NCBI GenBank assembly: GCA_002269645.1
Contig: NIVC01002601.1
Coordinates: 93,950-157,949, forward strand
Length of the DNA stretch: 64,000 bases
Direction: 5' to 3'
Source: Macrostomum lignano
Lineage: Eukaryota
How positions within the stretch are numbered: the stretch's first letter is position 1; every line of letters begins with the position of its first letter. The position numbers were made by a program, and so were the translations under genes. Shown here piece by piece: positions 10,546 to 63,065 of the stretch. The notes below the pieces were generated by a model that saw only the letters and a list, made by a program, of their open reading frames with translations, was not told the origin of the DNA and did no database searches.

Positions 10546-10934
10546 ATGGTATATTCGGTGGTAGTTACTCAAGGTAAGTCATTGTGAGTGAGTGGAGGAG
10601 CGGTGAGCTCTCCTCACCTCGTTTGGCACTCCCAACTGAAGTCAGCTTAGGAGCTAAAGGATGCCTGCCAAAGGGGAGCTGAAAACGGAGAAAGGCTGGT
10701 GCCTGCCATGTGAGCAGGCGAGGTGTCTCGCCAGCACTCGTCGGTGCAACTAATAGACGGAAACGTAGTGTCAAAGTTTGCACTGAGCGTCAGCCGCCAG
10801 CTCAGCTGGAAAAGTCAATTATGCATGACGGAGCTGGAGTGACGAGTTTTCATCGTCTCCATCAAAGAGCCTGAGCCGATCCTGCTCATGTCTTAGAAAA
10901 TAGAGAACGCATGGAATCAAACAGAGGTCACGTG

Positions 10935-12925
10935 CTACACTCTCACTTTCACCCACTAACCATCTGTCACTCTCGCTTTCACCCACTAACCATCTGTCAC
11001 TCTCGCTTTCACCCACTAACCATCTGTCACTCTCGCTTTCACCCAATAACCATCTGTCACTCTCGCTTTCACCCACTAACCATCTGTCACTCTCGCTTTC
11101 ACCCAATAACCATCTGTCACTCTCACTTTCACCCAATAACCATCTGTCACTCTCACTTTCACCCATTAACCATCTGTCACTCTCACTTTCACCCATTAAC
11201 CATCTGTCACTCTCGCTTTCACCCACTAACCATCTGTCACTCTCGCTTTCACCCACTAACCATCTGTCACTCTCGCTTTCACCCACTAACCATCTGTCCC
11301 TCTCGCTTTCACCCAATAACCATCTGTCACTATCACTCACTAACCATCTGTCACTATCACTCACTAACCATCTGTCACTCTCACTCACTAACCATCTGTC
11401 ACTCTCACTCACTAACCATCTTTCACTCTCACTCTCACCCACTAACCATCTTTCACTCTCACTTTCACCCACTAACCATCCGTCACTCTCACTCACTAAC
11501 CATCTGTCACTCTCACCCACTAACCATCTGTCACTCTCACTCACTAACCATCTGTCACTCTCACTCACTAACCATCTGTCACTCTCACCCACTAACCATC
11601 TGTCACTCTCACTCACTAACCATCTGTCACTCTCACTCACTAAACATCTGTCACTCTCACTCACTAACCATCTGTCACTCTCACTCACTAACCATCTTTC
11701 ACTCTCACTCTCACCCACTAACCATCTTTCACTCTCACTTTCACCCACTAACCATCCGTCACTCTCACTCACTAACCATCTGTCACTCTCACCCACTAAC
11801 CATCTGTCACTCTCACTCACTAACCATCCGTCACTCTCACTCACTAACCATCTGTCACTCTCACCCACTAACCATCTGTCACTCTCACTCACTAACCATC
11901 TGTCACTCTCACCCACTAACCATCTGTCACTCTCACTCACTAACCATCTGTCACTCTCACTCACTAAACATCTGTCACTCTCACTCACTAACCATCTGTC
12001 ACTCTCACTCACTAACCATCTGTTACTCTCACTCACTAACCATCTGTCACTCTCACCCACTAACCATCTGTCACTCTCACCCACTAACCATCTGTCACTC
12101 TCGCTCACTAACCATCTGTCACTCTCACTCACTAACCATCTGTCACTCTCACTCACTAACCATCTGTCACTCTCACTCACTAACCAACTCTCACTTTCAC
12201 CCACTAACCATCTTTCACTCTCACTTTCACCCATTAACCATCTGTCACTATCACTTTCCCCCACTAACCATCTGTCACTCTCACTTTCACCCACTAAACA
12301 TTTTTCACTCTCACTTTCACCCACTAACCATCTTTCACTCTCACTTTCACCCATTAACCATCTGTCACTATCACTTTCCCCCACTAACCATCTGTCACTC
12401 TCACTTTCACCCACTAACCATCTTTCACTCTCACTTTCACTCACTAACCATCTGTCACTCTCAGTCACTAACCATCTGTCACTCTCACTCACTAACCATC
12501 TGTCACTCTCACCCACTAACCATCTGTCACTCTCACTCACTAAAAATCTGTCACTGTCACTCACCAACCATCTGTCACTCTTACTCACTAACCATCTGTT
12601 ACTCTCACTCACTAACCATCTGTCACTCTCACTCACTAACCATCTGTCACTCTCACTCACTAACCATCTGTCACTCTCACTCACTAACCATCTGTCACTC
12701 TCACTCACTAACCATCTGTCACTCTCACCCACTAACCATCTGTCACTCTCACTCACTAACCATCTGTCACTCTCACTCACTAACCAACTGTCACTCTCAC
12801 CCACTAACCATCTGTCACTCTCACTCACTAACCATCTGTCACTCTCACTCACTAACCAACTGTCACTCTCACTCACTAACCATCTGTAACTCTCACTCAC
12901 TAACCATCTGTCACTCTCACTACCC
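10935..12925. repeat. 24/30-bp minisatellite (CACTAACCATCTGTCACTCTCACT[TTCACC])
   Basis: About 2 kb of mixed 24- and 30-bp units; source of the 693- and 723-aa pseudo-ORFs. Confidence 0.96.
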
Positions 12926-13384
12926 TAAGTTTTTATCCCCTGCCCCTAGCCAAATAATCCCAATCCCCAGTTTCAAAGCCACGAGCCAGCAAAAGCAGAA
13001 GACAATGCATCCTCTCTGTAAGCCCAGTGCAGGGCCACATCCTTCCTGCAGAAACAGACTTTCCTCATTCATCTTTCCATAGGCACAATTTCCCTTTTAG
13101 TCGGTGCTTCAGCCCATTGTAAAAACGGACCACGCGGTCAGCCTCCGCTTCCTCAAAGCAAGGATCTGGCAGGAAGTGCTCGGGAATTTCTGGCAAAGTT
13201 TTTTATTAAAGAAAAAATTGCTATTAAAGGTTTGAACAGGGACTTCGTCATAGCAACTAGCTCTTTCCTTCTTGGTCTATGGAATTCCGTGCTACAAGAC
13301 TTCAAGAGGAACTTCGAAATCTTCTAAAAATCTTCGATTTTTCTATACCCGAATGACGGTTGAATTACCAGCTAGGAGACAAAG

Positions 13385-16115: not shown

Positions 16116-16832
16116 GAGAACCCTAACTCTCACACCCCAGCTACAGGCAACTCTGACACCCCAGCTACAGTCTATTCTGACACCCCAGCTACAGTCTATT
16201 CTGACACCCCAGCTACAGTTTATTCTGACACCCCAGCTGCAGTCTATTCTGACACCCCAGCTGCAGTCTATTCTGACACCTCAGCTACAGTCTATTCTGA
16301 CACCCCAGCTACAGTCTATTCTGACACCCCAGCTCCAGTCTTATCTGACACCCCAGCTACAGTCTATTCTGACACCCCAGCTACAGTCTATTCCGACACC
16401 CCAGCTACAGTCTTATCTGACACCCCAGCTACAGTCTATTCGGACACCCCAGCTACAGTCTATTCTGACACCCCAGCTACAGTCTATTCTGACACCCCAG
16501 CTACAGTCTTATCTGACACCCCAGCTACAGTCTATTCTGACACCCCAGCTACAGTCTATTCTGACACCCCAGCTACAGTCTATTCTGACACCCCAGCTAC
16601 AGTCTATTCTGACACCACAGCTACAGTCTATTCTGACACCCCAGCTACAGTCTATTCTGACACCCCAGCTACAGTCTATTCCGACACCCCAGCTACAGTC
16701 TTATCTGACACCCCAGCTACAGTCTATTCTGACACTCCAGCTACAGTCTATTCTGACACCCCAGCTACAGTCTATTCTGACACCCCAGCTACAGTCTATT
16801 CTGACACTCCAGCTACAGTCTATTCTGACACC
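16116..16832. repeat. 21-bp minisatellite (CTGACACCCCAGCTACAGTCTATT-type) in the GPCR intron
   Basis: About 34 units abutting the donor site; produces the (ILTPQLQS)n ORF, whose 8-aa period suggests the unit may be 24 bp. Confidence 0.9.
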
Positions 16833-16837
16833 CTCAC

Positions 16838-22419: not shown

Positions 22420-23245
22420 CCCCAGGTAGATAATCGGTGCCCCAGACCCTCCACCCCAGCCAGGTAGATAATTAGAGCATCGGTGCCCCAGCCCCTCCAC
22501 CCCAGCCAGGTAGATAATTACAGCATCGGTGCCCCCAGCCCCTCCACCCCAGCCAGGGATATAACTACAGCATCGGTGCCCCCAGCCCCTCCACCCCAGC
22601 CAGGGATATAACTACAGCATCGGTGCCCCAGCCCCTCCACCCCAGCCAGGTAGATAATTACAGCATCGGTGCCCCAGCCCCTCCACTCCAGCCAGGGAGA
22701 TAACTACAGCATCGGTGCCCCCAGCCCTTCCACTCCAGCCAGGGAGATAACTACAGCATCGGTGCCCCAGCCCCTCCACCCCAGCCAGGGATATAACTAC
22801 AGCATCGGTGCCCCAGCCCCTCCACCCCAGCCAGGGATATAACTACAGCATCGGTGCCCCCAGCCCCTCCACCCCAGCCAGGGATATAACTACAGCATCG
22901 GTGCCCCAGCCCCTCCACCCCAGCCAGGTAGATAATTACAGCATCGGTGCCCCAGCCCCTCCACTCCAGCCAGGGAGATAACTACAGCATCGGTGCCCCC
23001 AGCCCTTCCACTCCAGCCAGGGAGATAACTACAGCATCGGTGCCCCAGCCCCTCCACCCCAGCCAGGGAGATAACTACAGCATCGGTGCCCCAGCCCCTC
23101 CACCCCAGCCAGGTAGATAATTACAGCATCGTTGCCCTAGCCCCTCCACTCCAGCCAGGGAGATAATTACAGCACCGGTTTCCCCAGCCCCTCCACCCCA
23201 GCCAGGCAGGTAACTACAGCATCGGTGCCCCAGCCAGGCAGGTAG
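22420..23245. repeat. ~46-bp minisatellite, CAP intron 1
   Basis: GATAA(C/T)TACAGCATCGGTGCCCCAGCCCCTCCACCCCAGCCAGG units, about 17 copies. Confidence 0.93.
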
Positions 23246-24229: not shown

Positions 24230-25478
24230 TATGGATCCCTTCCCCAAAGTCCTTATGGATCCCTACGACCTCCACTAAGTCCCTATGGATCCCTATCATC
24301 CACTAAGTCCCTATGGATCCCTATGACCTCCACTAAGTCCTTATGGATCCCTATGACCTCCACTAAGTCCTTATGGATCCCTATGACCTCCACTAAGTCC
24401 TTATGGATCCCTATGACCTCCACTAAGTCCTTATGGATCCCTATGACATCCACTAAGTCCCTATGGATCCCTATGACATCCACTAAGTCCCTATGGATCC
24501 CTATGGCCTCCAATAAGTCCTTATGGATCCCTATGACCTCCACTAAGTCCCTATGGATCCCCACGACCTCCACTAAGTCCCTATGGATCCCTATGACATC
24601 CACTAAGTCCCTATGGATCCCTATGACCTCCACTAAGTCCTTATGGATCCCTATGACCTTCACTAAGTCCTTATGGATCCCTATGACCTTCACTAAGTCC
24701 TTATGGATCCCTATGACCTCCACTAAGTCCCTATGGATCCCTATCATCCACTAAGTCCCTATGGATCCCTATGGATCCCTATGACCTCCACTAAGTCCTT
24801 ATGGATCCCTATGACATCCACTAAGTCCCTATGGATCCCTATGACCTCCACTAAGTCCTTATGGATCCCTATGACCTTCACTAAGTCCTTATGGATCCCT
24901 ATGACCTTCACTAAGTCCTTATGGATCCCTATGACCTCCACTAAGTCCTTATGGATCCCTATGACATCCACTAAGTCCCTATGGATCCCTATGACATCCA
25001 CTAAGTCCCTATGGATCCCTATGACCTCCACCAAGTCCCTATGGATCCCTATGGCCTCCAATAAGTCCTTATGGATCCCTATGACCTTCACTAAGTCCTT
25101 ATGGATCCCTATGACCTCCACTAAGTCCCTATGGATCCCTATGACCTCCACTAAGTCCCTATGGATCCCTATGACCTCCACTAAGTCCTTATGGATCCCT
25201 ATGACCTTCACTAAGTCCTTATGGATCCCTATGACCTCCACTAAGTCTTTATGGATCCCTATGACCTTCACTAAGTCCTTATGGATCCCTATGACCTTCA
25301 CTAAGTCCTTATGGATCCCTATGACCTCCACTAAGTCTTTATGGATCCCTATGGCCTCCAATAAGTCCTTATGGATCCCTATGACCTCCACTAAGTCCCT
25401 ATGGATCCCCACGACCTCCACTAAGTCCCTATGGATCCCTATGACCTCCACTAAGTCCCTATGGATCCCTATGACCTA
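24230..25478. repeat. 30-bp minisatellite (ATGACCTCCACTAAGTCCTTATGGATCCCT)
   Basis: About 41 units, each with a BamHI site. Confidence 0.96.
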
Positions 25479-27664: not shown

Positions 27665-30600
27665 TCAATTAACTGAGAATTATCTATCAATTAACTGAGG
27701 ATTATCTATCAATTAACTGAGGATTATATATCAATGAACTGAGGATTATCTATCAATTAACTGAGGATTATCTATCAATTAACTGAGAATTATCTATCAA
27801 TTAACTGAGGATTATCTATCAATTAACTGAGGATTATCTATCAATTAACTGAGGATTATCTATCAATTAACTGAGGATTATCTATCAATTAACTGAGGAT
27901 TATCTATCAATTAACTGAGGATTATATATCAATGAACTGAGGATTATCTATCAATTAACTGAGGATTATCTATCAATTAACTGAGAATTATCTATCAATT
28001 AACTGAGGATTATCTATCAATTAACTGAGGATTATCTATCAATTAACTGAGGATTATCTATCAATTAACTGAGGATTATCTATCAATTAACTGAGGATTA
28101 TCTATCAATTAACTGAGGATTATATATCAATTAACTGAGGATTATATATCAATTAACTGAGGATTATCTATCAATTAACTGAGGATTATCTATCAATTAA
28201 CTGAGGATTATATATCAATTAACTGAGGATTATCTATAAATTAACTGAGGATTATCTATCAATTAACTGAGGATTATATATCAATTAACTGAGGATTATC
28301 TATCAATTAACTGAGGATTATATATCAATTAACTGAGGATTATATATCAATGAACTGAGGATTATCTATAAATTAACCGAGGATTATATATCAATTAACT
28401 GAGGATTATCGATCAATTAACTGGGGATTATCTATCAACTAACTGATGATTATCTATCAATTAACTGAGGATTATATATCAATTAACTGAGGATTATATA
28501 TCAATTAACTGAGGATTATCGATCAATTAACTGGGGATTATCTATCAACTAACTGATGATTATCTATCAATTAACTGAGGATTATATATCAATTAACTGA
28601 GGATTATATATCAATTAACTGAGGATTATCTATCAATTAACTGAGGATTATCTATCAATTAACTGAGGATTATCTATCAATTAACTGAGGATTATATATC
28701 AATGAACTGAGGATTATATATCAATGAACTGAGGATTATCTATCAATTAACCGAGGATTATATATCAATTAACTGAGGATTATCGATCAATTAACTGGGG
28801 ATTATCGGTCAACTAACTGATGATTATCTATCAATTAACTGAGGATTATATATCAATTAACTGAGGATTATATATCAATTAACTGAGGATTATCTATCAA
28901 TTAACTGAGGATTATATATCAATTAACTGAGGATTATATATCAATTAACTGAGGATTATCTATCAATTAACTGAGGATTATATATCAATGAACTGAGGAT
29001 TATATATCAATGAACTGAGGATTATCTATCAATTAACTGAGGATTATCTATCAATTAACTGAGGATTATATATCAATGAACTGAGGATTATATATCAATG
29101 AACTGAGGATTATCTATCAATTAACTGAGGATTATCTATCAATTAACTGAGGATTATCTATCAATTAACTGAGGATTATATATCAATTAACTGAGGATTA
29201 TATATCAATTAACTGAGGATTATATATCAATTAACTGAGGATTATATATCAATTAACTGAGAATTATCTATCAATTAACTGAGGATTATCTATCAATTAA
29301 CTGAGGATTATCTATCAATTAACTGAGGATTATATATCTATTAACTGAGGATTATATATCAATTAACTGAGGATTATATATCAATTAACTGAGGATTATC
29401 TATCAATTAACTGAGGATTATCTATCAATTAACTGAGGATTATCTATCAATTAACTGAGGATTATATATCTATTAACTGAGGATTATCTATCAATTAACT
29501 GAGGATTATCTATCAATTAACTGAGGATTATCTATCAATTAACTGAGGATTATCTATCAATTAACTGAGGATTATATATCAATGAACTGAGGATTATCTA
29601 TCAATTAACTGAGGATTATATATCAATGAACTGAGGATTATCTATCAATTAACTGAGGATTATCTATCAATTAACTGAGAATTATCTATCAATTAACTGA
29701 GGATTATCGAACAACTAATTGAGGATTATATATCAATCAACTGAGGATTATCTATCAATTAACTGAGGATTATCTATCAATTAACTGAGGATTATCTATC
29801 AATTAACTGAGGATTATCTATCAATTAACTGAGGATTATATATCAATGAACTGAGGATTATCTATCAATTAACTGAGGATTATCTATCAATTAACTGAGA
29901 ATTATCTATCAATTAACTGAGGATTATCTATCAATTAACTGAGGATTATCTATCAATTAACTGAGGATTATCTATCAATTAACTGAGGATTATCTATCAA
30001 TTAACTGAGGATTATCTATCAATTAACTGAGGATTATATATCAATTAACTGAGGATTATATATCAATTAACTGAGGATTATCTATCAATTAACTGAGGAT
30101 TATCTATCAATTAACTGAGGATTATATATCAATTAACTGAGGATTATCTATAAATTAACTGAGGATTATCTATCAATTAACTGAGGATTATATATCAATT
30201 AACTGAGGATTATCTATCAATTAACTGAGGATTATATATCAATTAACTGAGGATTATATATCAATGAACTGAGGATTATCTATAAATTAACCGAGGATTA
30301 TATATCAATTAACTGAGGATTATCGATCAATTAACTGGGGATTATCTATCAACTAACTGATGATTATCTATCAATTAACTGAGGATTATATATCAATTAA
30401 CTGAGGATTATATATCAATTAACTGAGGATTATCTATCAATTAACTGAGGATTATCTATCAATTAACTGAGGATTATCTATCAATTAACTGAGGATTATA
30501 TATCAATGAACTGAGGATTATATATCAATGAACTGAGGATTATCTATCAATTAACCGAGGATTATATATCAATTAACTGAGGATTATCGATCAATTAACT

Positions 30601-32025
30601 GGGGATTATCGGTCAACTAACTGATGATTATCTATCAATTAACTGAGGATTATCTATCAATTAACTGAGGATTATATATCAATTAACTGAGGATTATCTA
30701 TCAATTAACTGAGGATTATATATCAATTAACTGAGGATTATATATCAATTAACTGAGGATTATCTATCAATTAACTGAGGATTATATATCAATGAACTGA
30801 GGATTATATATCAATGAACTGAGGATTATCTATCAATTAACTGAGGATTATCTATCAATTAACTGAGGATTATATATCAATGAACTGAGGATTATATATC
30901 AATGAACTGAGGATTATCTATCAATTAACTGAGGATTATCTATCAATTAACTGAGGATTATCTATCAATTAACTGAGGATTATATATCAATTAACTGAGG
31001 ATTATATATCAATTAACTGAGGATTATATATCAATTAACTGAGGATTATATATCAATTAACTGAGAATTATCTATCAATTAACTGAGGATTATCTATCAA
31101 TTAACTGAGGATTATCTATCAATTAACTGAGGATTATATATCTATTAACTGAGGATTATATATCAATTAACTGAGGATTATATATCAATTAACTGAGGAT
31201 TATCTATCAATTAACTGAGGATTATCTATCAATTAACTGAGGATTATCTATCAATTAACTGAGGATTATATATCTATTAACTGAGGATTATCTATCAATT
31301 AACTGAGGATTATCTATCAATTAACTGAGGATTATCTATCAATTAACTGAGGATTGTCTATCAATTAACTGAGGATTATCTATCAATTAACTGAGGATTA
31401 TCTATCAATTAACTAACTGAGGATTATCTATCAATTAACTGAGGATTATCGAACAACTAACTGAGGATTATCGAACAACTAATTGAGGATTATATATCAA
31501 TCAACTGAGGATTATCTATCAATTAACTGAGGATTATATATCAATTAACTGAGGATTATCTATCAATTAAGTGAGGATTATCTATCAATTAACTGAGGAT
31601 TATCTATCAATTAACTGAGGATTATCTATCAATTAACTGAGGATTGTCTATCAATTAACTGAGGATTATCTATCAATTAACTGAGGATTATCTATCAATT
31701 AACTGAGGATTATCTATCAATTAACTGAGGATTATCGATCAACTAACTAACTGGGGATCATCGATCAACTAACTAACTGGGGATCATCGATCAACTAACT
31801 GAGGATTATCTATAAATTAACTGAGGATTATCTATCAATTAACTGAGGATTGTCTATCAATTAACTGAGGATTATCTATCAATTAACTGAGGATTATCTA
31901 TCAATTAACTGAGGTCTATCTATCAATTAACTGAGGATTATCTATCAATTAACTGAGGATTATCTATCAATTAACTGAGGATTATATATCAATTAACTGA
32001 GGATTATCTATCAATCAACCACTTA
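27665..32025. repeat. 22-bp satellite array (TCAATTAACTGAGGATTATCTA), about 4.4 kb
   Basis: About 198 units, with variant units recurring at a fixed 1804-bp offset. Confidence 0.98.
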
Positions 32026-51434: not shown

Positions 51435-52711
51435 ATAAACATGCATTATAAAAATAATTCGGAGTGAATTAATATAAAAACACGCACTATACGAGCTTTT
51501 GCTTTGCAGTTTATTCAAGATGGGGAATTTCCATTGCCTAATCGACTGACTGTATTAAGTAAGTATGATTTATTTGTCCTTGGTGAATACGTAATTACAC
51601 CTCAAGATTACAATAAGATTAATTTGTTTAAGTATAAAGTAAACAAGCAGCTTGTTTTACATGTTAAAAAACACGTCTATTGCTGAATTTAAACTTTTTA
51701 CTATTAAATTTGTTATAGCTTTATATTGCTAGATACGCTTCAGATATTTAACTTTTCTAAAAATATCGAATTCGCATTTGCCATGCAATTATGCATCTAC
51801 ATGACATGATTAGATCTAGGTTAGTAGGTTTATTGCATACTCAACAGTTTACCAATCTAACAGATTTTGTCTGAGACAGTCAGTATTAGAATTAATTAAT
51901 AAATGCATTTTACTACGTTTCTATATCATTCTAGGATAATGTGCCTTTCGTCCGAGTATAAAAATGTATTAATAGCAATATTGTCGCGCTGATTTTACCA
52001 GTTGTTATGTTCCTGCTTCTAGGCTTTAGAAATTGTTTCTTGAGCGGCTGTTTCAATGGCTTCCTAATTGTCATTCTTAATTAATATAATCAGCATATCT
52101 ATTTGAAAACCTGTTTTTAGCAATTTTTTAAAATACATACATATTTTTTTACTTTTTCTGGATGCACTTACTATGGTGGTACTTGCATATTTAGAAATTA
52201 AAACAGTTTGTATTGCAGTATTATTTTATGTTAAACCGAATTTTAAAATGAACATATCTAAAAAATATTTAATATCTAATCACCTTTATTTTAGAAGGCA
52301 TAAATACAATGGATGATGTACATTGTCCATATAAACTTGTCCAAATCATCAAAAGGTTTATGATTTCCAGACAATTGTTTTTATTGTTTCTATTGAGTAT
52401 TGTTAATATGAATTCCAAGTAGATAATTTAGTTTGAGGAATCTGTACCTTAAATTTATTTTAAGCTAGTTAAGACGTCCATTACCAAACCTGTAAGACCA
52501 AGTTAATATGGTTCATTGAATTAATTTATTCAGCCATTCTGCCAGAAACGAAAAAGCTAACCTTTAATTAAGCTTGCTGATCTATTAGTAATAAACTGGA
52601 TTGATTCCTCAATTTGTTTTTTTAACAAAATATTATGTTTCTAGTCATTTGAATTTCATTCTTTATACAACAAATAGCCGACAAAAATACATTGCAGATC
52701 CCCAACCAACA

Positions 52712-53156
52712 ATGGGAAAGAAGAAAAAGGGAGGCGGCAAGAAGTCTAAGAAGTCTTCGCGCGCCCAATCTGGCGCCACTGGACAGGCTGGCGCGGGCGC
52801 CAAATTGGCGCCAGCATTGCCAGACAAGCGCGAACAGGAGGCCAAACTGCGCCAATTGAAGGATCTCCAACGTCGAGTAAGCGGACTTCAGAGACGCTGC
52901 GACGAGTTGGAACTGTTGAACGACCAATTGAAGAGCAAGCGGGTGACGGTGTCGGGCGACATGGAGGAGATCACAGAGTACCTGCGCGACCGGGTGAGCG
53001 AGAAGACGAACACCTGCGCCGAGCTGCAGGAGGAGCTGCGCGCGCTTCAAGAGGCCTACGAGAAGGATCAGAAATCCTACGAGGAGAGAATGGAGAAGCA
53101 GAAGAAAGAATTTCGGGACACGAAGGAGCAGCTGGAGCAGGACGGGTTCACGCTGC
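52712..53156 (+). CDS. CFAP157: Cilia- and flagella-associated protein 157, exon 1
   Basis: Lys-rich N-terminus, then coiled coil (LKDLQRRVSGLQRRCDEL...EFRDTKEQL) resembling CFAP157 as I recall it; phase-1 donor C|GTGAGT. Confidence 0.88.
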
Positions 53157-53536
53157 GTGAGTTGAATTGAACGAAATTAAATTAACTTCAGTTACATGCG
53201 TTGTAGCGCTCTCCATCTTTTGGCGCCCTCTTGAATTAAATTCATTTCGCGCCCTCGTGAAATTCAATTTTAGCGCCCTCGTGAAATTCATTTCGGCGCC
53301 CTCTTGAAATTCATTTTGGCGCCGTCCCTACACTTATTCAATATTTCGTCGCCCTCTTGACATTCATTGTGACTTCCTTATAAGAATCATTTTGACGCCT
53401 TCTCGACACCCAATTTGGCGCCTTCCCGACACTCATTTTGGCGCCACATCCACTAAGTTTGGCTACCATTCACATGCAAGTTACAAAAGTATCTGTGAAT
53501 TGTTAACAGCTTGCTGTACGCCGATCCCAACCGCAG

Positions 53537-53958
53537 AGAGCAAGCTGACCACCCTGGACGAGTACCGGATCCAGAAGGAGGAGATGCACGAGAAGTTCCA
53601 AGAAATGGACGAGAAAATGAAGCGCCAGGAGGAGATTCACAAGGAGGAGATCTACCTACTGGAGAGGGAGACAGTAGTGCAGAAAGACTCTCTGCGCAAG
53701 GAGATGGTCGAGAAAGTGAACGATGTGGCCAGCGAATTCCGCAAGGTGTCCAACAGGCAGATGGCAGAGACGACCCGGAAGACGATCGAAGAGAACGCGG
53801 CGCTCAACAGGCAGCTGGGCTCGCTCAGCGAGAAAATCACCGGCCTGATTGAGGAGAACGACAAAGTCAAGGCCAAGGAGAAGGAGCAGCAGCGGGAGAT
53901 CGAGGTGCTGGAGTCCATCGAGAAGGAGATGCTGGCCAAGACTGCCAACTCGTTGAAG
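53537..53958 (+). CDS. CFAP157: CFAP157, exon 2
   Basis: Acceptor CGCAG| in phase 1; KLTTLDEYRIQKEE...KDSLRKEMVEKVNDVASEFRKVS...ETTRKTIEEN; phase-0 donor AAG|GTAAAC. Confidence 0.92.
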
Positions 53959-54139
53959 GTAAACTCGATCGCCTTCCAGAGTCACGGACGGACAAGAAAT
54001 TAATTTGGGTTTTACAATTACTTGTGTGCTTTACTGATTCAATAAGAAGCCTATGCTCAAGTACTAGCGGAGGTTAACTAAGCTTTCCGCATAATATCTA
54101 TAAATTTGAAGGTCATTTGGCTCTCACTGGAAGTCAAAT

Positions 54140-54400
54140 TTTCACTGACAGTCAATTGTCATTGACAGTCAAATTGGTCACTGACAGTCAAATTGGTCAT
54201 TGACAGTCAAATTGGTCACTGTTAGTCAAATTGGTCACTGTTAGTCAAATTGGTCACTGTTAGTCAAATTGGTCACTGTTAGTCAAATTGGTCACTGACA
54301 GTCAAATTGGTCACTGTTAGTCAAATTGGTCACTGTTAGTCAAATTGGTCACTGATAGTCAAATTGGTCACTGATAGTCAAATTGGTCACTGACAGTCAG
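54140..54400. repeat. 19-bp minisatellite (GGTCACTGTTAGTCAAATT)
   Basis: GGTCA at 54195, 54214 and 54233. Confidence 0.92.
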
Positions 54401-54647
54401 CTGTGTTTAAGATCAGTCTTTGAAAGGCAGAAAAGCATTACAACTCTGTCGAATACTTCAAAGTTATACAGTCGATTCGGTGTTTCCCATAATTATTAAC
54501 AGCAGAGTTTGGGAGAACTTTTGCTTTAAAAATGCAACAGAAAGGATGCTAAAAAGGTGGCTAGCATTGTATAAACATAAAACTACAAGCCAGAATGGTT
54601 CAGAAGAAAATATTCGCACCAGATAAAACCTTTAGCTCGTAAACTAG

Positions 54648-55284
54648 TTAATTGGAATAGCTCGGCTTCAAAGCGGCCAGCAGGTCCCGATCAGCCGAGC
54701 CGAGCTCCTGCTGGCTAAAGTTGAACAGCTCCAGTTTGTCGCTAGGAAGCCGCTGTCTGAGCTCGTCAAAGAACGGGTGCGCCAGAGCTCGCAGCGGTGC
54801 CAACCGGCTGCCAGGCTGGTAGGCGAGCAGGCGGCACAGCAGGTCCAGCAACTCGGGCGGTGTACCAATCGGGAAGCTCAACTGCGGGTCAGGGGCCACC
54901 TGTGGCAGCGGGAACTTCTCATATACTGGATTCATAGCCAGCAGGTCGCGCTTGGTTGGCGTGCCCAGCACCCGGATGATGGCCACCAGCTGGTCCAGCG
55001 AGTTGTTAGCCATGAACAGGCAGTGGCCGATGCACAGCTCGGCAAGCACGCAGCCGACTGACCACAGGTCGATGGCACAGCTGTAATTAGTAGAGCCGAA
55101 CAGCAGCTCGGGAGCTCGGTAGTACCTAGAGCTGATGTACGCCACTCCGGCTGCGGCGGCCGCGTTGGCGCCGCTGCCTTCGGCAAGTTCGCCGGGCAGC
55201 GGCAGCTCCTTGGCCGAGCCGAAGTCGCACAGGCGCAGGCGGCAGTCGGATTCGTCAACGAGAACGTTCGGGCTCTTGATGTCC
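54648..55284 (-). CDS. GSK3: GSK3-like kinase, last exon; 387 aa without and 448 aa with the cassette exon
   Basis: (R)DIKSPNVLVD, LCDFGSAKEL, VAYISSRYYRAPELLFGS, IDLWSVGCVLAEL, ALAHPFFDELR; stop TAA at 54648-54650. Confidence 0.92.
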
Positions 55285-55384
55285 CTTGGGAAGGAAAGTA
55301 ATCCGGTTCCAAGACACTATAATGCTGCAGTCACGTGTTAGGCCTTGTTTTTAAGGCCTAACGCCAGCCCCACATGTCCCCTTT

Positions 55385-56385
55385 TTTTTCTGGGCCAGCT
55401 TCCCAGATCCTCAGTTGCTGGGCCAGCCTCCCAGATTCCCAGTTGCTGGCCCTGCCTCACAGGTCCTCAGTTGCTGGGCCAGCATCCCAGATCTCCAGTT
55501 GCTGGGCCAGCCGGCCAGATCCCCAGTTGCTGGGCCAGCATCCCAGATCCCCAGTTGCTGGGCCAGCCTCCCAGATCCTCAGTTGCTGGGCCAGCCTCCA
55601 AGATCCCCATTTGCTGGGCCAGCATCCCAGATCCCCAGTTGCTGGGCCAGCCTCCCAGATCCTCAGTTGCTGGGCCAGCCTCCAAGATCCCCAGTTGCTG
55701 GGCCAGCCTCCAAGATCCCCAGTTGCTGGGCCGGCCGGCCAGATACCAGTTGCTGGGCCTGCCTCTCAGGTCCTTAGTTGCTGGGCCAGCCTCCCAGACT
55801 CCCAGTTTCTAAGTCTGACGCTGTTCCAGATGGTCATAGCTGCTCCGTCATCAGCCGCTCACCTGTGGCAGATGCGATGCGAATGCATATAATTGATAGC
55901 TCGCAGAAGCTGGTAGGCAAAGATTCGCACTTTGAGCATGGAAGGCAAAGTCTCAGCTTTCCTGTATCTTGCCAGCAAGTCTAACAGACTCTCCGGGAAG
56001 AGCTCAGTAACCAGGTGCAAATAGAGCTTCGGGCTCTTGATGTCCCTTGGGAAGGAAAGTAATCCGGTTCCAAGACACTATAATGCTGCAGTCACGTGTT
56101 AGGCCTTGTTTTTAAGGCCTAACGCCAGCCCCACATGTCCCCATTTTTTTCTGGGCCAGCTTCCCAGATCCTCAGTTGCTGGGCCAGCCTCCCAGATTCC
56201 CAGTTGCTGGGCCTGCCTCACAGGTCCTCAGTTGCTGGGCCAGCATCCCAGATCTCCAGTTGCTGGGCCAGCCGGCCAGATCCCCAGTTGCTGGGCCAGC
56301 ATCCCAGATCCGGCCAGATACCAGTTGCTGGGCCTGCCTCTCAGGTCCTTAGTTGCTGGGCCAGCCTCCCAGACTCCCAGTTTCT
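55385..56385. repeat. ~26-bp minisatellite (CCCAGATCCCCAGTTGCTGGGCCAGC) in both copies of the duplicated kinase intron
   Basis: Arrays at about 55385-55800 and 56150-56385. Confidence 0.9.
55863..56045 (-). CDS. GSK3: GSK3-like kinase, duplication-derived in-frame cassette exon (183 nt)
   Basis: Intact copied acceptor (56046) and donor (55862); reads DIKSP-KLYLHL...ICHR. Confidence 0.5.
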
Positions 56386-56437
56386 AAGTCTGACGCTGTT
56401 CCAGATGGTCATAGCTGCTCCGTCATCAGCCGCTCAC

Positions 56438-56805
56438 CTGTGGCAGATGCGATGCGAATGCATATAATTGATAGCTCGCAGAAGCTGGTAGGCAAAGATT
56501 CGCACTTTGAGCATGGAAGGCAAAGTCTCAGCTTTCCTGTATCTTGCCAGCAAGTCTAACAGACTCTCCGGGAAGAGCTCAGTAACCAGGTGCAAATAGA
56601 GCTTGCCCGGGTCCATCTTGCCCCGGCAGTAGTAGTGGTAGCGCAGTCGCACCAGATTCTCGTGCTCACCAAGTGCGTACAGAGTGCGCAGTTCCCGATT
56701 TTTGTAGCGCGGATCCTGCAGCACCCGCTTGAGAGCCACCGACTCGCCTGACTCGGACAGGCGGCCTCGGTACACGGAGCCGAACGTGCCGGATGCGATT
56801 GGCCC
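56438..56805 (-). CDS. GSK3: GSK3-like kinase, exon 2 (subdomains I-VIa)
   Basis: Acceptor TCATCAAG| at 56806; ASGTFGSVY, VALKRVLQDPRYKNREL, ICHR; phase-2 donor AG|GTGAGC. Confidence 0.9.
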
Positions 56806-57142
56806 CTTGATGAATGAAGTTTAGAGCGCCTGCGCTATATGGTGATGCAGTTACTCGTAATACCAGGCGCCAAACGATCGTATTCCATTTTATTTTATTT
56901 TATCCAATTCAAATTGGCGCCAAACACTGGGACTGCTAAATTGTCGTTTATAGTATTCCGAAAACAGCTTTAAAAACAAACACAATTAATAAAATATTTA
57001 GCTGTGTTAACTGCTTAACGATTGTTTATTTAACAATACCGTTTTGGCGCCAAATTTGAACTAGATTGAATTTTAACGAACGCCAAAACGAGAAAAATTC
57101 CATTTTTTAGAAAGTACAGAAGAAAATTGAGTCTCTAGTTAA

Positions 57143-57906
57143 CAGGGGTCAGCAAACTCCGGCCCGCTCAGTGCTTATATCTCTTCTCAGCGCTCTTCTA
57201 TCTAATCTCCTCTCTCCTCTCCTCTCCTCTACTCTACTCTTTCCTTTCTCCTCTCCTCTTCTCTCCTCTTCTCTACTCTACTCTACTCTCTCCCCTCTAC
57301 TCTCCCCTCTCCTCTCCCCTCTCCTCTCCTCTCCTCTTCTCTCCTCTCCTCTTCTCTACTCTCCTCTTCTCTACTCTACTCTCTCCCCTCTACTCTCCCT
57401 CTCCTCTCCCCTCTCCTCTCCTCTCCTCTTCTCTCCTCTCCTCTTCTCTACTCTACTCTCTCCCCTCTCCTCTCCCCTCTCCTCTCCCCTCTCCTCTCTC
57501 CTCTCCTCTCCTCTTCTCTCTTATCCTCTTCTCTCCTCTCCTCTTCTCTACTCTACTTTACTCTCTCCCCTCTCCTCTCCTCCCTGCTCCTCTCCTCTAC
57601 TCTACTCTCTCCCTCTCTCCTCTCCTCTCCTCTCCTTTCCTCTCTCCCTTCTCCTCTCCCTTCTCCTCTCCTCTCCTCTCCTCTCCTCTCCTCTCCTCTC
57701 CTCTCCTCTCTCCTCTTCTCTCCTCTCCCAATTCATCTCTTCTTGTTCTTTCCTCTCGTCTTCTCTTTTCTCGTTAATTCCCTCGCTTCAAGCCTCTTTC
57801 TCCCTATCTCCCCCTTCTTTATTCCCTCCTCTTCCCTCCTCCGGTCCGCAGTTATGACCTAGGTTCTCTATCTGGCCCTTGTGGTAAAAACGTTGGCCAA
57901 CCTCCG
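57143..57906 (-). mobile_element. hAT-like MITE with a ~650-bp expanded CT tract, in kinase intron 1
   Basis: CAGGGGTCAGCAAACTCCGGCCCG start and decayed ...AAAAACGTTGGCCAACCTCCG end; CTCTAGT at 57133-57139 and 57907-57913. Confidence 0.7.
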
Positions 57907-58008
57907 CTCTAGTATTTCATGTCGTTATTCGGGCAGTTTTACGCATTGTAAATGCACAACTCGACTCAATGCGAAATCGTACACTACTCGTACATGCAAG
58001 TCGCTTAC

Positions 58009-58167
58009 CGTAGACACAGTCAGTTCAATTTGTCTATAAGACTGTCTCTGGATCGGATCAAAAGCCGGACAAGCCATGACGGAAACTTGCAACTGTTTTT
58101 TTTGTCGGCTGTGCGACGAGCGCGTCTTCTCGCCGTCGAATTGGTCGTCATAGCTGATTAAGGACAT
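58009..58167 (-). CDS. GSK3: GSK3-like kinase, exon 1 (nested antisense in CFAP157 intron 2)
   Basis: MSLISY...LQVSVMACPAFDPIQRQSYRQIELTVST resembles the GSK3 pre-kinase segment; phase-0 donor ACG|GTAAGC at 58008. Confidence 0.72.
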
Positions 58168-58859
58168 TTCTTGCTTCTTGTTTGCGAGTCCCAAGTCTTG
58201 GTTCAACAAAAAAGTGCCTATTTAACTTCGATTTGGTTCAGCAGGCGTTCTATTGAAGCCAATTGTTGGGTCCTGGCGTAGAATTTTATAACTTTGGGGT
58301 GGTTGGGTTTGGGGGGTTTGTTTTGGGTTTTATGACCCCCCTTCCTCAAACACCCATTTATAGTGAATGTACAATGCAATGTACATTTAGAAATAGCTTC
58401 TTAGTACATCTCGTCTAACAAGTTTTTCTGTACAGTTTTCACGTTGATTGATTGTAAATTTCTTTGTAATTAATTATCTGCAATACCTCACCAGAGCAGA
58501 GCTTGCTGCCTAGTCAGTTTTACATCAATTTTGAAAACCCCCTCTGAGTCTGTCATTGGAATACAGACTGCTACAAACTATACATGTACAATAGTTTAAC
58601 TGAAGTGAACTGAAGTTTTTTTTAAGTGCCACTTGGTCTGGTTTTTCACTGGACAGACAATACGAGCGTTGTAATGCGATGTAAAAGATGGTTATTTTGG
58701 TTGATGCTGCTCGGCAGGGAAGAGCAAAAGGTCGCGGCTCCCGACCGGTACTGGCCCCGGGTCGCCCACCATCACTAAACCGAAAAATCACAACTCCGAA
58801 AAGCATTGTCCATCATAGGCTCGATATATCATAGCACCGAAAGTGCTAGCGGGTTTGTC

Positions 58860-59010
58860 GTTTGTGATATTTACGGTTTGTGATATTTCGGGTTTTTGAT
58901 ATTTCGGGTTTGTGATATTTCGGGTTTGTGATATTTCGAGTTTGTGATATTTCGGGTTTGTGATATTTCGGGTTTGTGATATTTCGGGTTTGTGATATTT
59001 CGGGTTTGTG
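58860..59010. repeat. 16-bp tandem repeat (CGGGTTTGTGATATTT)
   Basis: Period 16 at 58921/58937; about 9 units. Confidence 0.9.
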
Positions 59011-59114
59011 ATGCCCTCTGGCCCATTCTATGTAACCTCCAAAGACGCAGCCTCTGCATTGATAATAATCTTTTTAAGAAACAATTTTTTTATCTCCTTT
59101 TTTTTTAATCGCAG

Positions 59115-59828
59115 ACAATCCGCAGCCTCGCCGACGCGTGCCGCGACCGCGACACTCAACTAATCGACATGGAGGAGCGAGCCGAGGCTGGCGACTCCGT
59201 GCAGTCCGAGCACAGCCTGCTCGGCGCCCAGGCCGAGTCACAGTCCCAGGAGCTAGTTGCTATGCGCACCGAGACATCCAACCAGCTAACCGAACTGGAC
59301 CGCCTGGCCGAGCTGGCCCGCCAGACCGCGCGCATCCACAGGCGGTTCCAGCGCCTGCTGCGCCAGTCGGAACGCGCCGTGTCTGACGCATTTTCAACTT
59401 TAACGCCGGACGAAGAGATGACAGAAGCTGAGGCGGTCATACTCCGTCGCAAAATGTTGGTGAGCCTGCTGGAACTGCTGCACATGGCGGCCAGGGTCGG
59501 CCTGGGCCCTGAACCGGCCAGTCTCGGCCGCGCTGGCCAGCCGGGCACGGTTGAGCGGAAACCGTTGCGAGCGTCGTCAGCTTCCGGCGGTGCGCCTTCG
59601 TCCGCTGGCAAACGCGGCAGCGGCGGCGGCCTGGTCAGCGAGCGCCTCAGCGAACTCGGCCTGGCCCCGGCAGCCGCCGCCACAAAGCGCAGCGGCGGAG
59701 GCGGCGGTGGCGTCTCCTCCCGGACGGAGTTCGTGGCCGAGAAGCTGGCCACCCAGCTGCCGCCAGGCGGCCTGCTGGAGCCGCTGATCCTTCGCCGCGG
59801 CCGTCCAGTGCCCGCTGGCATCTTCTAG
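59115..59828 (+). CDS. CFAP157: CFAP157, exon 3; full CDS 1581 nt, 526 aa
   Basis: Acceptor TTTTTTAATCGCAG| in phase 0 gives TIRSLADACRDRD...RRKMLVSLLELL; stop TAG at 59826-59828. Confidence 0.82.
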   Translation, partial: TIRSLADACRDRDTQLIDMEERAEAGDSVQSEHSLLGAQAESQSQELVAMRTETSNQLTELDRLAELARQTARIHRRFQRLLRQSERAVSDAFSTLTPDEEMTEAEAVILRRKMLVSLLELLHMAARVGLGPEPASLGRAGQPGTVERKPLRASSASGGAPSSAGKRGSGGGLVSERLSELGLAPAAAATKRSGGGGGGVSSRTEFVAEKLATQLPPGGLLEPLILRRGRPVPAGIF

Positions 59829-61020: not shown

Positions 61021-61926
61021 TTATGACGCGGACAGAAAGTTGGTGTTAATCAAGTAGTGCTCGTAGCAGCAGGCCCTGACGATGCCCGACAGGCCTTCAA
61101 AGAATACCGACTGCGGATTCCTGTGCGAGTGCCAGACGCGAAAGCCGAGATCAAAGAGGCGCCGCCACACTCGCAGAAATTTCGCATAGTCCGAGCCTTG
61201 GCCGCGCATCTCGGCAGTGTGAGACTCGAACATCAGCTGCTTGACCCGCCTCAGGCAGCCTTCACTGATGGCCCGGTCAAGACTGTCCCACTCCCAGTAT
61301 TCGATGTCCACTTTGACGATGTCCACTTTGCCGTCACTGAAGCCGAGATCCGCGAACAGCTCGCACAGTGTGCGCATCCTCCAGCCTGAGCTCCCCTCGC
61401 TGCTCTTGTTGCCCCAGAGGCCCACCTGGTAGAACCAGGCGGACCGGCTTCGCTGGTGATCCGGCACCGGCATGCTGGGGTCGAACATGTACACCTTGCA
61501 GCCGAACCGGCCCGACAGTTCGTCGTCGTAGCTCCAGACGTTGTTGATGCCGAACGAGAACGCCACGCAGGACTTGCCGATGTTGAAGGGCTCGCTGATG
61601 CAGACATCCCAGCCTCCATCCAGAGCGTCTCCAACTCGGACACTGGTTGGACAGGCGATCTGTAGCTCGTCAGTCACGTTGAAGTAAAGATTCTCAAGCT
61701 CAACAGCAGACAGCTGATTTAAGTTTATATTGCTTAGCGCGGGACCTTTGTGCGACCTCGGGGTCGGAGCTGCAGCTTTCGACTGGCCAACATTAATGTT
61801 TCCAATTCCTGCGATTCTGTGACTAATAGGAAAGTTGTTGAATATGCGAATGACAGCGACTGACAGAAGCAGCAGCAGCACTATTGCTGCAGAGAACAGC
61901 AACTGAAAGCGTTGCACCAGAGGCAT
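61021..61926 (-). CDS. METTL24: Methyltransferase-like protein 24 family (Methyltransf_22-type), intronless, 301 aa with an N-terminal signal anchor
   Basis: Hydrophobic N-terminus; DGGWDVC, CVAFSFGINNVWSYD, GCKVYMFDPS, VDIVKVDIEYWEW, VKQLMFESH, CCYE motifs. ATG taken at 61926; the track's 62019 start is a GTG. Confidence 0.85.
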   Translation of the reverse strand: MPLVQRFQLLFSAAIVLLLLLSVAVIRIFNNFPISHRIAGIGNINVGQSKAAAPTPRSHKGPALSNINLNQLSAVELENLYFNVTDELQIACPTSVRVGDALDGGWDVCISEPFNIGKSCVAFSFGINNVWSYDDELSGRFGCKVYMFDPSMPVPDHQRSRSAWFYQVGLWGNKSSEGSSGWRMRTLCELFADLGFSDGKVDIVKVDIEYWEWDSLDRAISEGCLRRVKQLMFESHTAEMRGQGSDYAKFLRVWRRLFDLGFRVWHSHRNPQSVFFEGLSGIVRACCYEHYLINTNFLSAS

Positions 61927-62394
61927 TTTCGAGTGAATGATAAATTTCAAAGAAAGCTTTCCGAATGATGCACTATTCAATCGAACGTATTTGTAGTGAA
62001 CAGGACTTGGATTTTTCACCTTGTTTATTCAGGCAACGTGGTATCCCCAGAGCCTATAATGACCTGAAACCAAATAACTTCTCAAACCCGATCCATTTAC
62101 GAGCTAAATTGGAAATTGAATAAATAAGATCGCAAATGAATTGTCAGTGGTACAGCTGAGAACATAATCGTTAGAATCCTGCTTTTTCTTTTGACTTTTG
62201 CCGTTGCAACGTAAGTGATATGGCGCCTGCATGAGTATGTAACGTGAACAGAGTGTTGGAATTACGAGCATAGTACTCGTAGTAGCAGTCTATACGGTAT
62301 ATTCTGCACTGGATTATTTGAAGTAATGGATTTTAGATATATTTAGACGGCAAACTTTCTAAGGACACAGGGCACTAACTTAATTAGGCAACAG

Positions 62395-63065
62395 ACTAGC
62401 TATCTGAGAGGACATGACCTCAGACAAATTTATGCAACAGGCTATCTGAGGACATATGACCTGAGAGACAAATTTATGCTACAGGCTATCTGAGGACATG
62501 ACCTCAGAGACAAATTTACGCTACAGGCTATCTGAGGACATGACCTCAGAGACAAATTTATGCTACAGGCTATCTGAGGACATGACCTCAGAGACAAATT
62601 TATGCAACAGGCTATCTGAGGACATATGACCTGAGAGACAAATTTATGCTACAGGCTATCTGAGGACATGACCTCAGAGACAAATTTATGCTACAGGCTA
62701 TCTGAGGACATGACCTCAGAGACAAATTTATGCAACAGGCTATCTGCATGAGGACATGACCTCAGAGACAAATTTATTCTACAGGCTATCTGAGGACATG
62801 ACCTCAGAGACAAATTTATGCAACAGGCTATCTGCATGAGGACATGACCTCAGAGACAAATTTATGCAACAGGCTATCTGAGGACATGACCTCAGAGACA
62901 ATTTATGCAACAGGCTATCTGAGGACATGACCTCAGAGACAATTTATGCAACAGGCTATCTGAGGACATGACCTCAGAGACAATTTATGCAACAGGCTAT
63001 CTGAGGACATGACCTCAGAGACAAATTTATGCAACAGGCTATCTGAGGACATGACCTCAGACAAC
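62395..63065. repeat. 42-bp minisatellite with an internal palindrome
   Basis: GGCTA at 62526 and 62568; each unit holds TCTGAGG-ACATGA-CCTCAGA. Confidence 0.95.

What the first reader, a model, noticed from the sequence alone, without database searches (positions are those of the whole stretch)
55269..56604. Intragenic duplication builds an in-frame chimeric cassette exon in the GSK3-like kinase
A segment spanning the 3' part of exon 2, the intron and the first bases of the next exon is tandemly duplicated. The junction CCG AAG CTC (2-nt AA overlap) is in frame. The new 183-nt exon (56045-55863) has intact splice sites and encodes DIKSP plus a second copy of the hinge/alphaD-alphaE region up to ICHR. 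Skipping gives a normal 387-aa kinase; inclusion gives 448 aa with two HRDIK catalytic loops, probably misfolded or dominant-negative. The intron copies differ in minisatellite length (578 vs 392 nt) and at a few bases, which argues against a trivial duplicate. This would be intron/exon gain caught in progress.
Basis: seen in the sequence. Interest (0 to 1): 0.7.

Follow-up and report, generated by a model that had tools for sequence, protein, structure and literature searches.

The report
Young in-frame duplication inside flatworm kinase gene
One copy of a GSK3-like kinase gene in the flatworm Macrostomum lignano carries a real, recent head-to-tail duplication that adds an extra in-frame exon and intron, a known way for genes to gain exons, and an undamaged sister copy of the gene sits elsewhere in the same genome.

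Summary
On the minus strand, 56604-56028 (577 nt) and 56029-55267 (763 nt) are tandem copies. They differ by two intronic substitutions and a 186-nt minisatellite indel. The junction CCCGAA|GCTC has a 2-nt overlap.

The result is a 183-nt in-frame chimeric exon (56045-55863) flanked by exact copies of the constitutive splice sites. Skipping gives 387 aa, identical to GenBank PAA57716.1. Inclusion gives 448 aa.

The gene is a divergent GSK3-family kinase of Macrostomum lignano. The same junction and the same 392/183/578 architecture occur in two other contigs of the public Mlig_3_7 assembly. A third homeologous contig, about 2.5% diverged, has the single-copy gene, so an assembly artefact is unlikely.

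The "cassette exon" reading is untested. I could reach no transcript data, and the only skip-type annotation comes from a pipeline prone to multi-mapping. Because the splice signals are identical, I expect inclusion by default. That would give a kinase with a 61-aa internal tandem duplication, tolerated because this neopolyploid keeps an intact homeolog.

Propagation of an existing intron by internal tandem duplication is already described (Arabidopsis TOUCH3; Gao & Lynch 2009). This is a new member of a known kind, of modest interest.

The parts
54648..58167 (-). Coding span (ATG to TAA) of a divergent GSK3-family kinase gene of Macrostomum lignano
   Evidence: The skip product is identical to P0122 / PAA57716.1, 387 aa. 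Pfam Pkinase matches. The best PDB hits are GSK3-beta at E about 1e-89.
58009..58167 (-). Exon 1 (coding part, 159 nt, phase 0), followed by GTAAGC
56806..58008 (-). Intron 1, containing the GA/CT-rich microsatellite 57206-57728
56438..56805 (-). Exon 2 (368 nt). Its last 167 nt (56604-56438) are part of the duplicated unit. It ends CACAG|GTGAGC (phase 2, inside the Arg codon of HRD).
56028..56604 (-). Duplication copy 1 (577 nt, first in the transcript): exon-2 tail, the 392-nt intron and 18 nt of exon-3 head
56046..56437 (-). Intron 2a (392 nt, GT..AG) with a short, irregular 28-nt minisatellite (56151-56382)
55863..56045 (-). Chimeric 183-nt in-frame exon: 18 nt of exon-3 head joined to 167 nt of exon-2 tail with a 2-nt overlap. 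It encodes (R)DIKSPK-LYLHLVTE...HSHRICH(R).
56024..56033 (-). Duplication junction CCCGAA|GCTC. The AA at 56029-56028 is the microhomology shared by both parental sequences.
   Evidence: The same 20-mer junction is found in L001 and L003.
55267..56029 (-). Duplication copy 2 (763 nt): exon-2 tail, the 578-nt intron and 18 nt of exon-3 head
55285..55862 (-). Intron 2b (578 nt) with the longer 28-nt minisatellite (55390-55807, 15 units)
54648..55284 (-). Exon 3 (637 nt including TAA at 54650-54648): the rest of the catalytic loop (DIKSPN), DFG, the activation segment and the C-lobe

Best explanation
This is a real and evolutionarily young head-to-tail duplication inside one homeologous copy of a divergent GSK3-family kinase gene of the neopolyploid flatworm Macrostomum lignano.

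Origin (inferred from the junction): a non-homologous event, either replication slippage/template switch or microhomology-mediated end joining, used only a 2-nt AA overlap. It copied the last 167 nt of exon 2, all of intron 2 and the first 18 nt of exon 3.

What the sequence shows: the pre-existing intron is propagated, so one intron becomes two. A 183-nt in-frame chimeric exon is created, and its 3' and 5' splice sites and flanking intron sequence are exact copies of the constitutive ones.

Expected splicing (inferred): with identical signals and nearest-neighbour, co-transcriptional pairing, each donor should pair with the next acceptor. The exon would then be included by default. The product would be a 448-aa kinase with a 61-aa internal tandem duplication of beta5, hinge, alphaD, alphaE and HRDIKSP.

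Expected protein (inferred): it can at best fold with the second copy in the catalytic core and the first copy extruded between beta4 and beta5. It is probably destabilised.

Why it persists (presence of the intact copy is shown; tolerance is inferred): the same genome holds an un-duplicated homeolog, about 2.5% diverged and with 3 amino-acid differences, that encodes the normal 387-aa kinase. The duplicated allele is therefore best read as a tolerated structural variant, an early step of homeolog divergence or decay after whole-genome duplication. It is not a demonstrated regulated cassette exon.
For: - Repeat structure and junction.
- Frame and products of 387 and 448 aa, with skip identical to PAA57716.1.
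- Species and family. All catalytic and priming-pocket residues are conserved in alignment A2 (K79, E91, R90, HRD 175-177, N182, DFG 196-198, K201, Y225).
- The same junction and the same 392/183/578 architecture occur in NIVC01002452.1 (L001) and NIVC01004173.1 (L003).
- L001 differs from the window at 55450 and 55077, where it carries the L002 state, and has a private 16-nt insertion. It is therefore a separate haplotype sequence, not the same consensus.
- The un-duplicated homeolog NIVC01001104.1 (L002) has a single 493-nt intron and a product identical to P0001.
- Age: the copies differ at 2 of 575 aligned nt (1 of 575 in L001), against 73 mismatches in 2868 nt between homeologs. The CDS has 11 differences, 8 synonymous and 3 non-synonymous. 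This matches the published subgenome divergence of 2.2% genome-wide and 1.1% in CDS (PMC10733133).
- Structure: AlphaFold2 places copy 2 (183-243) in the core at pLDDT 88-97 and leaves copy 1 (119-180) at 42-71 with its beta5 strand lost. The same residues score 94-97 in the 387-aa control.
- The Pfam Pkinase match is split into two stretches in the 448-aa form.
Against: - No RNA evidence could be reached, so default inclusion is inference only.
- The one full-length annotation at a duplicated locus (L001) is the skip form of 387 aa. No 448-aa protein is present among about 15 billion proteins. This weakly favours skipping, or low or no expression of the inclusion form.
- All contigs come from one read set and one assembler, from the inbred DV1 line.
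- L001 is a mosaic that switches relatedness at the intron-1 microsatellite. Published work finds 36% of this assembly's length in chimeric scaffolds. The claim of two independent haplotypes therefore rests on a few SNPs.
- The AlphaFold register is biased, because MAFFT aligned all homologs to copy 2.
Confidence: 0.55

Rival explanations
1. One reading: this is a new-born cassette exon. The duplicated allele makes both a normal 387-aa kinase, by pairing donor 56438 with acceptor 55284 across a 1153-nt intron, and a 448-aa isoform. Function would be kept by skipping while the new exon is tried out.
For: - Skipping is arithmetically in frame and gives exactly PAA57716.1.
- GenBank annotates that 387-aa product at the duplicated locus L001, while the un-duplicated L002 locus carries only a 121-aa model.
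- No inclusion-type protein is on record.
Against: - The annotation is genome-guided (StringTie/TACO plus BLAT at minId 0.8) in a genome where 93% of read pairs multi-map. Reads or transcripts from L002 could produce the skip model at L001.
- L003 has the same exons and architecture as L001 but was annotated with 121 aa, so these models are not reliable guides to isoforms.
- All four splice sites and their surroundings are identical, so nothing marks the new exon as weak.
- From established knowledge, intragenic tandem exon duplications, for example in DMD, are normally included in mRNA.
Confidence: 0.25
2. The duplicated copies are transcriptionally silent or decaying pseudogenes. All kinase mRNA would come from the un-duplicated homeolog, and the extra exon would have no consequence at the protein level.
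For: - Annotation at this gene is fragmentary, with 121-aa models at two of three retrieved loci.
- No transcript-derived proteins from public run assemblies fall in this cluster.
- The gene lies antisense inside an intron of another gene.
- The neopolyploid background provides redundancy.
Against: - Apart from the duplication, every exon is intact in the window, L001 and L003.
- The 8 synonymous to 3 non-synonymous pattern against L002 indicates purifying selection over most of the divergence time.
- The duplication is too young (0.2-0.35%) for decay to be visible either way.
Confidence: 0.15
3. This is an assembly artefact: a false tandem duplication from a mis-join of two haplotypes or subgenome copies that differ in minisatellite length.
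For: - Polyploid assemblies of this species are known to contain expanded and chimeric haplovariants.
- The window and L003 are such a redundant pair, at 99.76% identity with 3 mismatches in 18 kb.
- The two intron copies differ mainly in minisatellite length.
Against: - The junction joins non-homologous positions, exon 3 base +18 to exon 2 base -167, which an overlap mis-join would not create.
- The identical junction and identical 392/183/578 architecture occur in three separately assembled contigs, one of which (L001) has different flanks and private variants.
- Neither intron copy matches the third homeolog's intron (493 nt, several percent diverged), while the two copies differ from each other by only 1-2 substitutions. 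They are therefore not two subgenome versions laid end to end.
Confidence: 0.05

Closest known systems
Propagation of a pre-existing intron by internal (intragenic) tandem duplication: Arabidopsis TOUCH3 (Knowles & McLysaght 2006) and the genome-wide cases of Gao & Lynch 2009, as summarised in PMC4974935 and PMC3443670
   Same: The head-to-tail unit contains an entire existing intron plus exonic sequence on both sides. The reading frame is kept. The gene gains one intron and one exon. The ancestral single-copy state is visible in a close paralog.
   Different: Here the event is very young (0.2-0.35% between copies). It lies in a kinase catalytic core rather than a repeat-tolerant protein such as a calmodulin-like EF-hand array. 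It is present in only some of the homeologous copies of a neopolyploid genome.
Intron creation by tandem duplication of an AGGT-containing exonic segment (Rogers 1989 model; Hellsten et al. 2011; potato RdRp case, PMC4974935)
   Same: A small tandem genomic duplication inside a gene changes the intron number.
   Different: In that model a new intron is made from formerly exonic sequence and the protein is unchanged. Here both introns are copies of an old intron, and the protein gains 61 residues if the exon is spliced in.
Tandem exon duplication giving mutually exclusive or alternative exons (Kondrashov & Koonin 2001; Letunic et al. 2002; reviewed in PMC9013439 and PMC9741552)
   Same: Duplicated coding sequence is arranged in tandem inside one gene and could in principle be used alternatively.
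   Different: Those events duplicate whole exons, with breakpoints in introns. The copies substitute for each other, and most are ancient and diverged. Here the breakpoints are inside exons, the new exon is a chimera of two exons, and the only alternatives are inclusion or skipping, not substitution.
In-frame internal tandem duplications and kinase-domain duplications in protein kinases (FLT3-ITD, EGFR-KDD, BRAF-KDD; from general knowledge, not tested here)
   Same: An in-frame head-to-tail duplication within a kinase gene yields a longer kinase.
   Different: Those are somatic, duplicate either a regulatory juxtamembrane segment or a whole kinase domain, and activate the kinase. Here a germline event duplicates only part of the core, from beta5 to the first half of the catalytic loop. 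This is more likely to destabilise the kinase than to activate it.

Membership tests
Internal tandem duplication that propagates a pre-existing intron | Two adjacent head-to-tail copies inside one gene | tested here: met
   Copies at 56604-56028 and 56029-55267, with 2 substitutions and one minisatellite indel
Internal tandem duplication that propagates a pre-existing intron | The unit contains a complete intron plus exonic sequence on both sides | tested here: met
   167 nt of exon 2, the intron (392 or 578 nt) and 18 nt of exon 3
Internal tandem duplication that propagates a pre-existing intron | The ancestral single-copy state is documented in a close relative | tested here: met
   Homeolog L002 (NIVC01001104.1) has one copy, a 493-nt intron and a product identical to P0001
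Internal tandem duplication that propagates a pre-existing intron | The reading frame is preserved through the new exon | tested here: met
   183 nt, a 448-aa open product
Cassette (alternatively spliced) exon | Both inclusion and skipping isoforms are observed in RNA from the same allele | not testable with these tools
   No read or transcript data were reachable. Only an ambiguous 387-aa annotation exists at L001, and no 448-aa protein is on record.
Intron gain by AGGT tandem duplication (Rogers model) | The new intron derives from duplicated exonic sequence, with the coding sequence unchanged | tested here: not met
   Both introns are copies of the old intron, and the coding sequence gains 183 nt
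GSK3 family (CMGC) protein kinase | Protein kinase domain whose best matches are GSK3 | tested here: met
   Pfam PF00069 at E 4e-57. PDB GSK3-beta at E 3e-89 over residues 18-378.
GSK3 family (CMGC) protein kinase | Catalytic Lys/Glu, HRD, Asn and DFG, the activation-loop Tyr, and the primed-substrate pocket (Arg96/Arg180/Lys205 equivalents) | tested here: met
   K79, E91, R90, H175-R176-D177, N182, D196-F197-G198, K201 and Y225 fall in invariant columns of the 48-sequence alignment
GSK3 family (CMGC) protein kinase | One-to-one orthology with canonical GSK3 | tested here: inconclusive
   Identity to GSK3 from any other species is only 40-49%. It looks like a divergent lineage-specific paralog, but no tree was built.
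False duplication (assembly artefact) | The junction is confined to a single contig or consensus | tested here: not met
   The junction 20-mer and the same architecture occur in the window, L001 and L003

The most novel reading that the evidence does not exclude
The duplication may be a functioning new-born alternative exon. The duplicated alleles would produce both the normal kinase, by skipping, and a 448-aa isoform in which the extruded first copy acts as a regulatory or dominant-negative module. The variant may also have been copied between subgenomes by gene conversion or recombination, which is suggested by the near-identity of L001 and the window across 6.3 kb against a background of about 2% divergence. 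That would make it a live example of exon birth and spread in a neopolyploid.
Probability: 0.15. Interest if true: 0.5.

Novelty: new member of a known kind. Interest (0 to 1): 0.3.

Why it matters
If the picture holds, this is a clean, datable example of how an internal tandem duplication adds an exon and an intron to a gene. Both the ancestral and the derived states sit side by side in one neopolyploid genome.

It offers a small natural experiment on two points:
- How a spliceosome pairs four identical splice sites.
- Whether a kinase core tolerates duplication of beta5 through the catalytic loop.

It is also a practical warning for annotation of Macrostomum lignano. Identical loci were given 387-aa and 121-aa models. 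It does not open a long-standing question or reveal a new mechanism.

Tried and rejected
- My first guess for exon 1 (ATG at 56888 with a 29-nt intron) gave an in-frame stop. The 387-aa homolog showed that the real exon 1 is at 58167-58009. An off-by-two exon-1 end was also corrected.
- P0001 has no contig on record.
- A full-text search for the gene identifier Mlig023110 found nothing.
- Gao & Lynch 2009 (PMC2791625) is not held, so it is cited only through PMC4974935 and PMC3443670.
- The supplement of PMC10733133 has no per-scaffold subgenome table, so I could not assign the contigs to S, L1 or L2.
- A whole-window direct-repeat scan was swamped by a 22-nt satellite and gave no information on other segmental duplications.
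- I considered and rejected the idea that the two intron copies are two subgenome alleles placed end to end (see the artefact rival).
- I could not force AlphaFold to test the alternative register with copy 1 in the core, because the aligner places all homologs on copy 2.

Full report
**1. What is in the sequence**

The feature lies on the minus strand. The repeat finder reports two exact or near-exact direct repeats. 55267-55550 matches 56028-56311 at 99%, and 55735-56029 matches 56310-56604 at 100%, with a spacing of 575.

Aligning the two units end to end gives copy 1 (56604..56028, 577 nt) and copy 2 (56029..55267, 763 nt). They differ by two substitutions (56211 C vs 55450 G; 56143 T vs 55382 A) and one 186-nt block. 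All differences lie in the intron, and the block lies in a 28-nt-unit minisatellite. That unit occurs nowhere else in the window.

The junction reads GGACATCAAGAGCCCGAA|GCTCTATTTGC. The parental sequences are ...GGGCAAGCTCTATTT... in exon 2 and ...AGCCCGAACGTTCTC... in exon 3, so only AA is shared.

**2. The gene**

A protein search identifies the gene as a Macrostomum lignano kinase. P0122 (PAA57716.1, BOX15_Mlig023110g1, 387 aa) and P0001 (UniRef A0A1I8GWD3, 387 aa) are 99-100% identical to it. The next-best hits, GSK3/shaggy proteins from many phyla, reach only 40-49% identity.

The gene model:

| Element | Window coordinates | Length |
|---|---|---|
| Exon 1 | 58167-58009 | 159 nt |
| Exon 2 | 56805-56438 | 368 nt |
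| Intron 2a | 56437-56046 | 392 nt |
| Chimeric exon | 56045-55863 | 183 nt |
| Intron 2b | 55862-55285 | 578 nt |
| Exon 3 | 55284-54648 | 637 nt |

Skipping the chimeric exon gives 387 aa, identical to P0122. Including it gives 448 aa with no stop. Retaining either intron stops translation at codon 177 or 238.

The protein matches Pfam Pkinase and GSK3-beta structures at E about 1e-89. All catalytic and primed-substrate-pocket residues sit in invariant alignment columns. It is a divergent GSK3-family paralog. I did not establish orthology.

The duplicated peptide runs from the start of beta5 (LYLHLVTE) through the hinge, alphaD and alphaE to HRDIKSP. In the first pseudo-loop the catalytic Asn is replaced by Lys (HRDIKSPK).

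**3. Real or artefact: comparison with other copies**

Exact-protein look-ups retrieved three contigs of the public Mlig_3_7 assembly, GCA_002269645.1.

| Locus | Contig | Duplication | Notes |
|---|---|---|---|
| L001 | NIVC01002452.1 | yes | same junction 20-mer, same 392/183/578 architecture, identical products |
| L003 | NIVC01004173.1 | yes | same junction 20-mer, same 392/183/578 architecture, identical products |
| L002 | NIVC01001104.1 | no | single 493-nt intron; encodes P0001 exactly |

L003 is essentially the window's own sequence assembled a second time, at 99.76% identity with 3 mismatches in 18 kb. This fits the published finding that 4-copy blocks in this assembly are mostly expanded haplovariants (PMC10733133).

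L001 is a different molecule:
- Its flanks and intron 1 differ strongly from the window.
- It has a private 16-nt insertion.
- At 55450 and 55077 it carries the L002 state.

The junction joins non-homologous positions. Neither intron copy resembles the third homeolog's intron, and the two copies differ from each other by only 1-2 substitutions. A haplotype mis-join is therefore very unlikely.

Two caveats apply. All contigs derive from one read set. L001 is also a mosaic: it is 0.66% from L002 upstream of the intron-1 microsatellite and 0.06% from the window downstream of it. This could be a true recombinant or a chimeric contig, and 36% of the assembly's length is reported as chimeric.

**4. 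Age and context**

The copies differ at 0.2-0.35% of aligned bases. The duplicated and un-duplicated homeologs differ at about 2.5% across the gene. In the CDS they differ at 0.95%, with 11 sites of which 8 are synonymous and 3 non-synonymous. This matches the published subgenome divergence of 2.2% genome-wide and 1.1% in CDS. The duplication is therefore roughly ten-fold younger than the divergence of the three subgenomes (S, L1, L2) of the DV1 line. Purifying selection acted over most of that divergence.

The locus is typical of this genome. The window is dense in 19-46-nt minisatellites, and tandem repeats make up 15% of the genome (PMC5730564).

**5. How it most likely works**

Shown: the chimeric exon is in frame. 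Its acceptor and donor, with at least 266 nt and at least 128 nt of adjoining intron, are exact copies of the constitutive sites.

Inferred: with no difference in signal strength, and with intron 2a complete about 760 nt before the second acceptor is transcribed, donor 1 should pair with acceptor 1 and donor 2 with acceptor 2. That is default inclusion, as is usual for intragenic tandem exon duplications (general knowledge).

The 448-aa product was modelled with AlphaFold2 using a 48-sequence alignment:
- The N-lobe plus copy 2 (183-243) form a confident kinase core at pLDDT 88-97.
- Copy 1 (119-180) drops to pLDDT 42-71 and loses its beta5 strand.
- In the 387-aa control, the same residues score 94-97.

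This is compatible with an intact core carrying an extruded 61-residue insert that includes the normally buried alphaE helix. However, the alignment placed all homologs on copy 2, so the chosen register is not an independent result.

Because L002 encodes an intact kinase, the organism does not depend on skipping. I read the duplicated allele as a tolerated structural variant in a redundant, recently polyploid genome.

**6. What remains open**

No transcript data could be reached. The collection of about 15 billion proteins holds no 448-aa form. The 387-aa skip model annotated at L001 comes from StringTie/TACO/BLAT on a genome in which 93% of read pairs multi-map. The equally structured L003 and the un-duplicated L002 both received only a 121-aa model. 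The annotation therefore neither proves skipping nor excludes inclusion.

**7. Comparison with the known, and verdict**

Tandem internal duplications that copy a whole pre-existing intron with exonic sequence on both sides are described for Arabidopsis TOUCH3 and in Gao & Lynch's survey. The literature explicitly distinguishes them from de novo intron creation by AGGT duplication (PMC4974935; PMC3443670).

The case differs from classical tandem exon duplication with mutually exclusive splicing (PMC9013439, PMC9741552), because the breakpoints lie inside exons. It differs from oncogenic kinase internal tandem or kinase-domain duplications because only part of the core is duplicated.

This is a new member of a known kind, of modest interest.

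Noticed in passing
window 52601-59828 (+ strand); L001 8385-15248, L003 5185-12314: The kinase gene lies antisense inside an intron of a plus-strand coiled-coil gene. ORF pieces are at 52601-53170, 53392-54003 and 59169-59828, and the gene is annotated as 530 aa in the public contigs. No Pfam family scores above its cut-off. The duplication therefore also lengthens the host gene's intron by 575 nt.
   Followed up: partly
L001 versus window about 57.2-57.4 kb (intron-1 GA microsatellite); window 50.9-62.9 kb: The three copies are related as a mosaic. Upstream of the microsatellite L001 is closest to L002 (0.66%). Downstream it is almost identical to the window (4 mismatches in 6.3 kb), while L002 is 1-5% diverged there. 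This could be recombination or gene conversion between subgenomes, or a chimeric contig.
   Followed up: partly
L001 10001-13300, L002 10001-10366, L003 10001-10366: The public annotation is inconsistent. Identical exon structures are annotated as 387 aa at L001 and as a 121-aa C-terminal fragment at L003. The intact un-duplicated L002 also gets only 121 aa.
   Followed up: partly
window 27665-32019: A 4.4-kb satellite of 197 copies of a 22-nt unit (TCAATTAACTGAGGATTATCTA), 94% matches, in a stretch of about 27% GC.
   Followed up: no
whole window, e.g. 4-611, 1330-2543, 6067-6849, 10943-12921, 16128-16833, 22433-23235, 24247-25477, 62399-63064: The density of minisatellites with 19-46-nt units is very high. 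Several produce long spurious ORFs on both strands, for example 10819-12900 and 10911-13082.
   Followed up: no
window 54124-54399 and about 58870-59010: A 19-nt tandem repeat (14.7 copies) lies about 250 nt downstream of the kinase stop codon. A 16-nt repeat (ATATCACAAACCCGAA, about 9 copies) lies about 700 nt upstream of exon 1. Both vary between the homeologous contigs.
   Followed up: no
window 61021-62019 (- strand): A single 332-aa ORF with a Methyltransf_22 domain (E 6e-11) and a predicted N-terminal hydrophobic segment. It is probably an intronless or single-exon gene next to the host gene.
   Followed up: partly
window 55390-55807 / 56151-56382 (transcript strand): Each 28-nt intron minisatellite unit contains the short inverted repeat CCCAG-CAA-CTGGG. 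The intron RNA could therefore form a string of small hairpins. The L002 array is more homogeneous (unit ACTGAGGATCTGAGAGGCTGGCCCAGCA).
   Followed up: no
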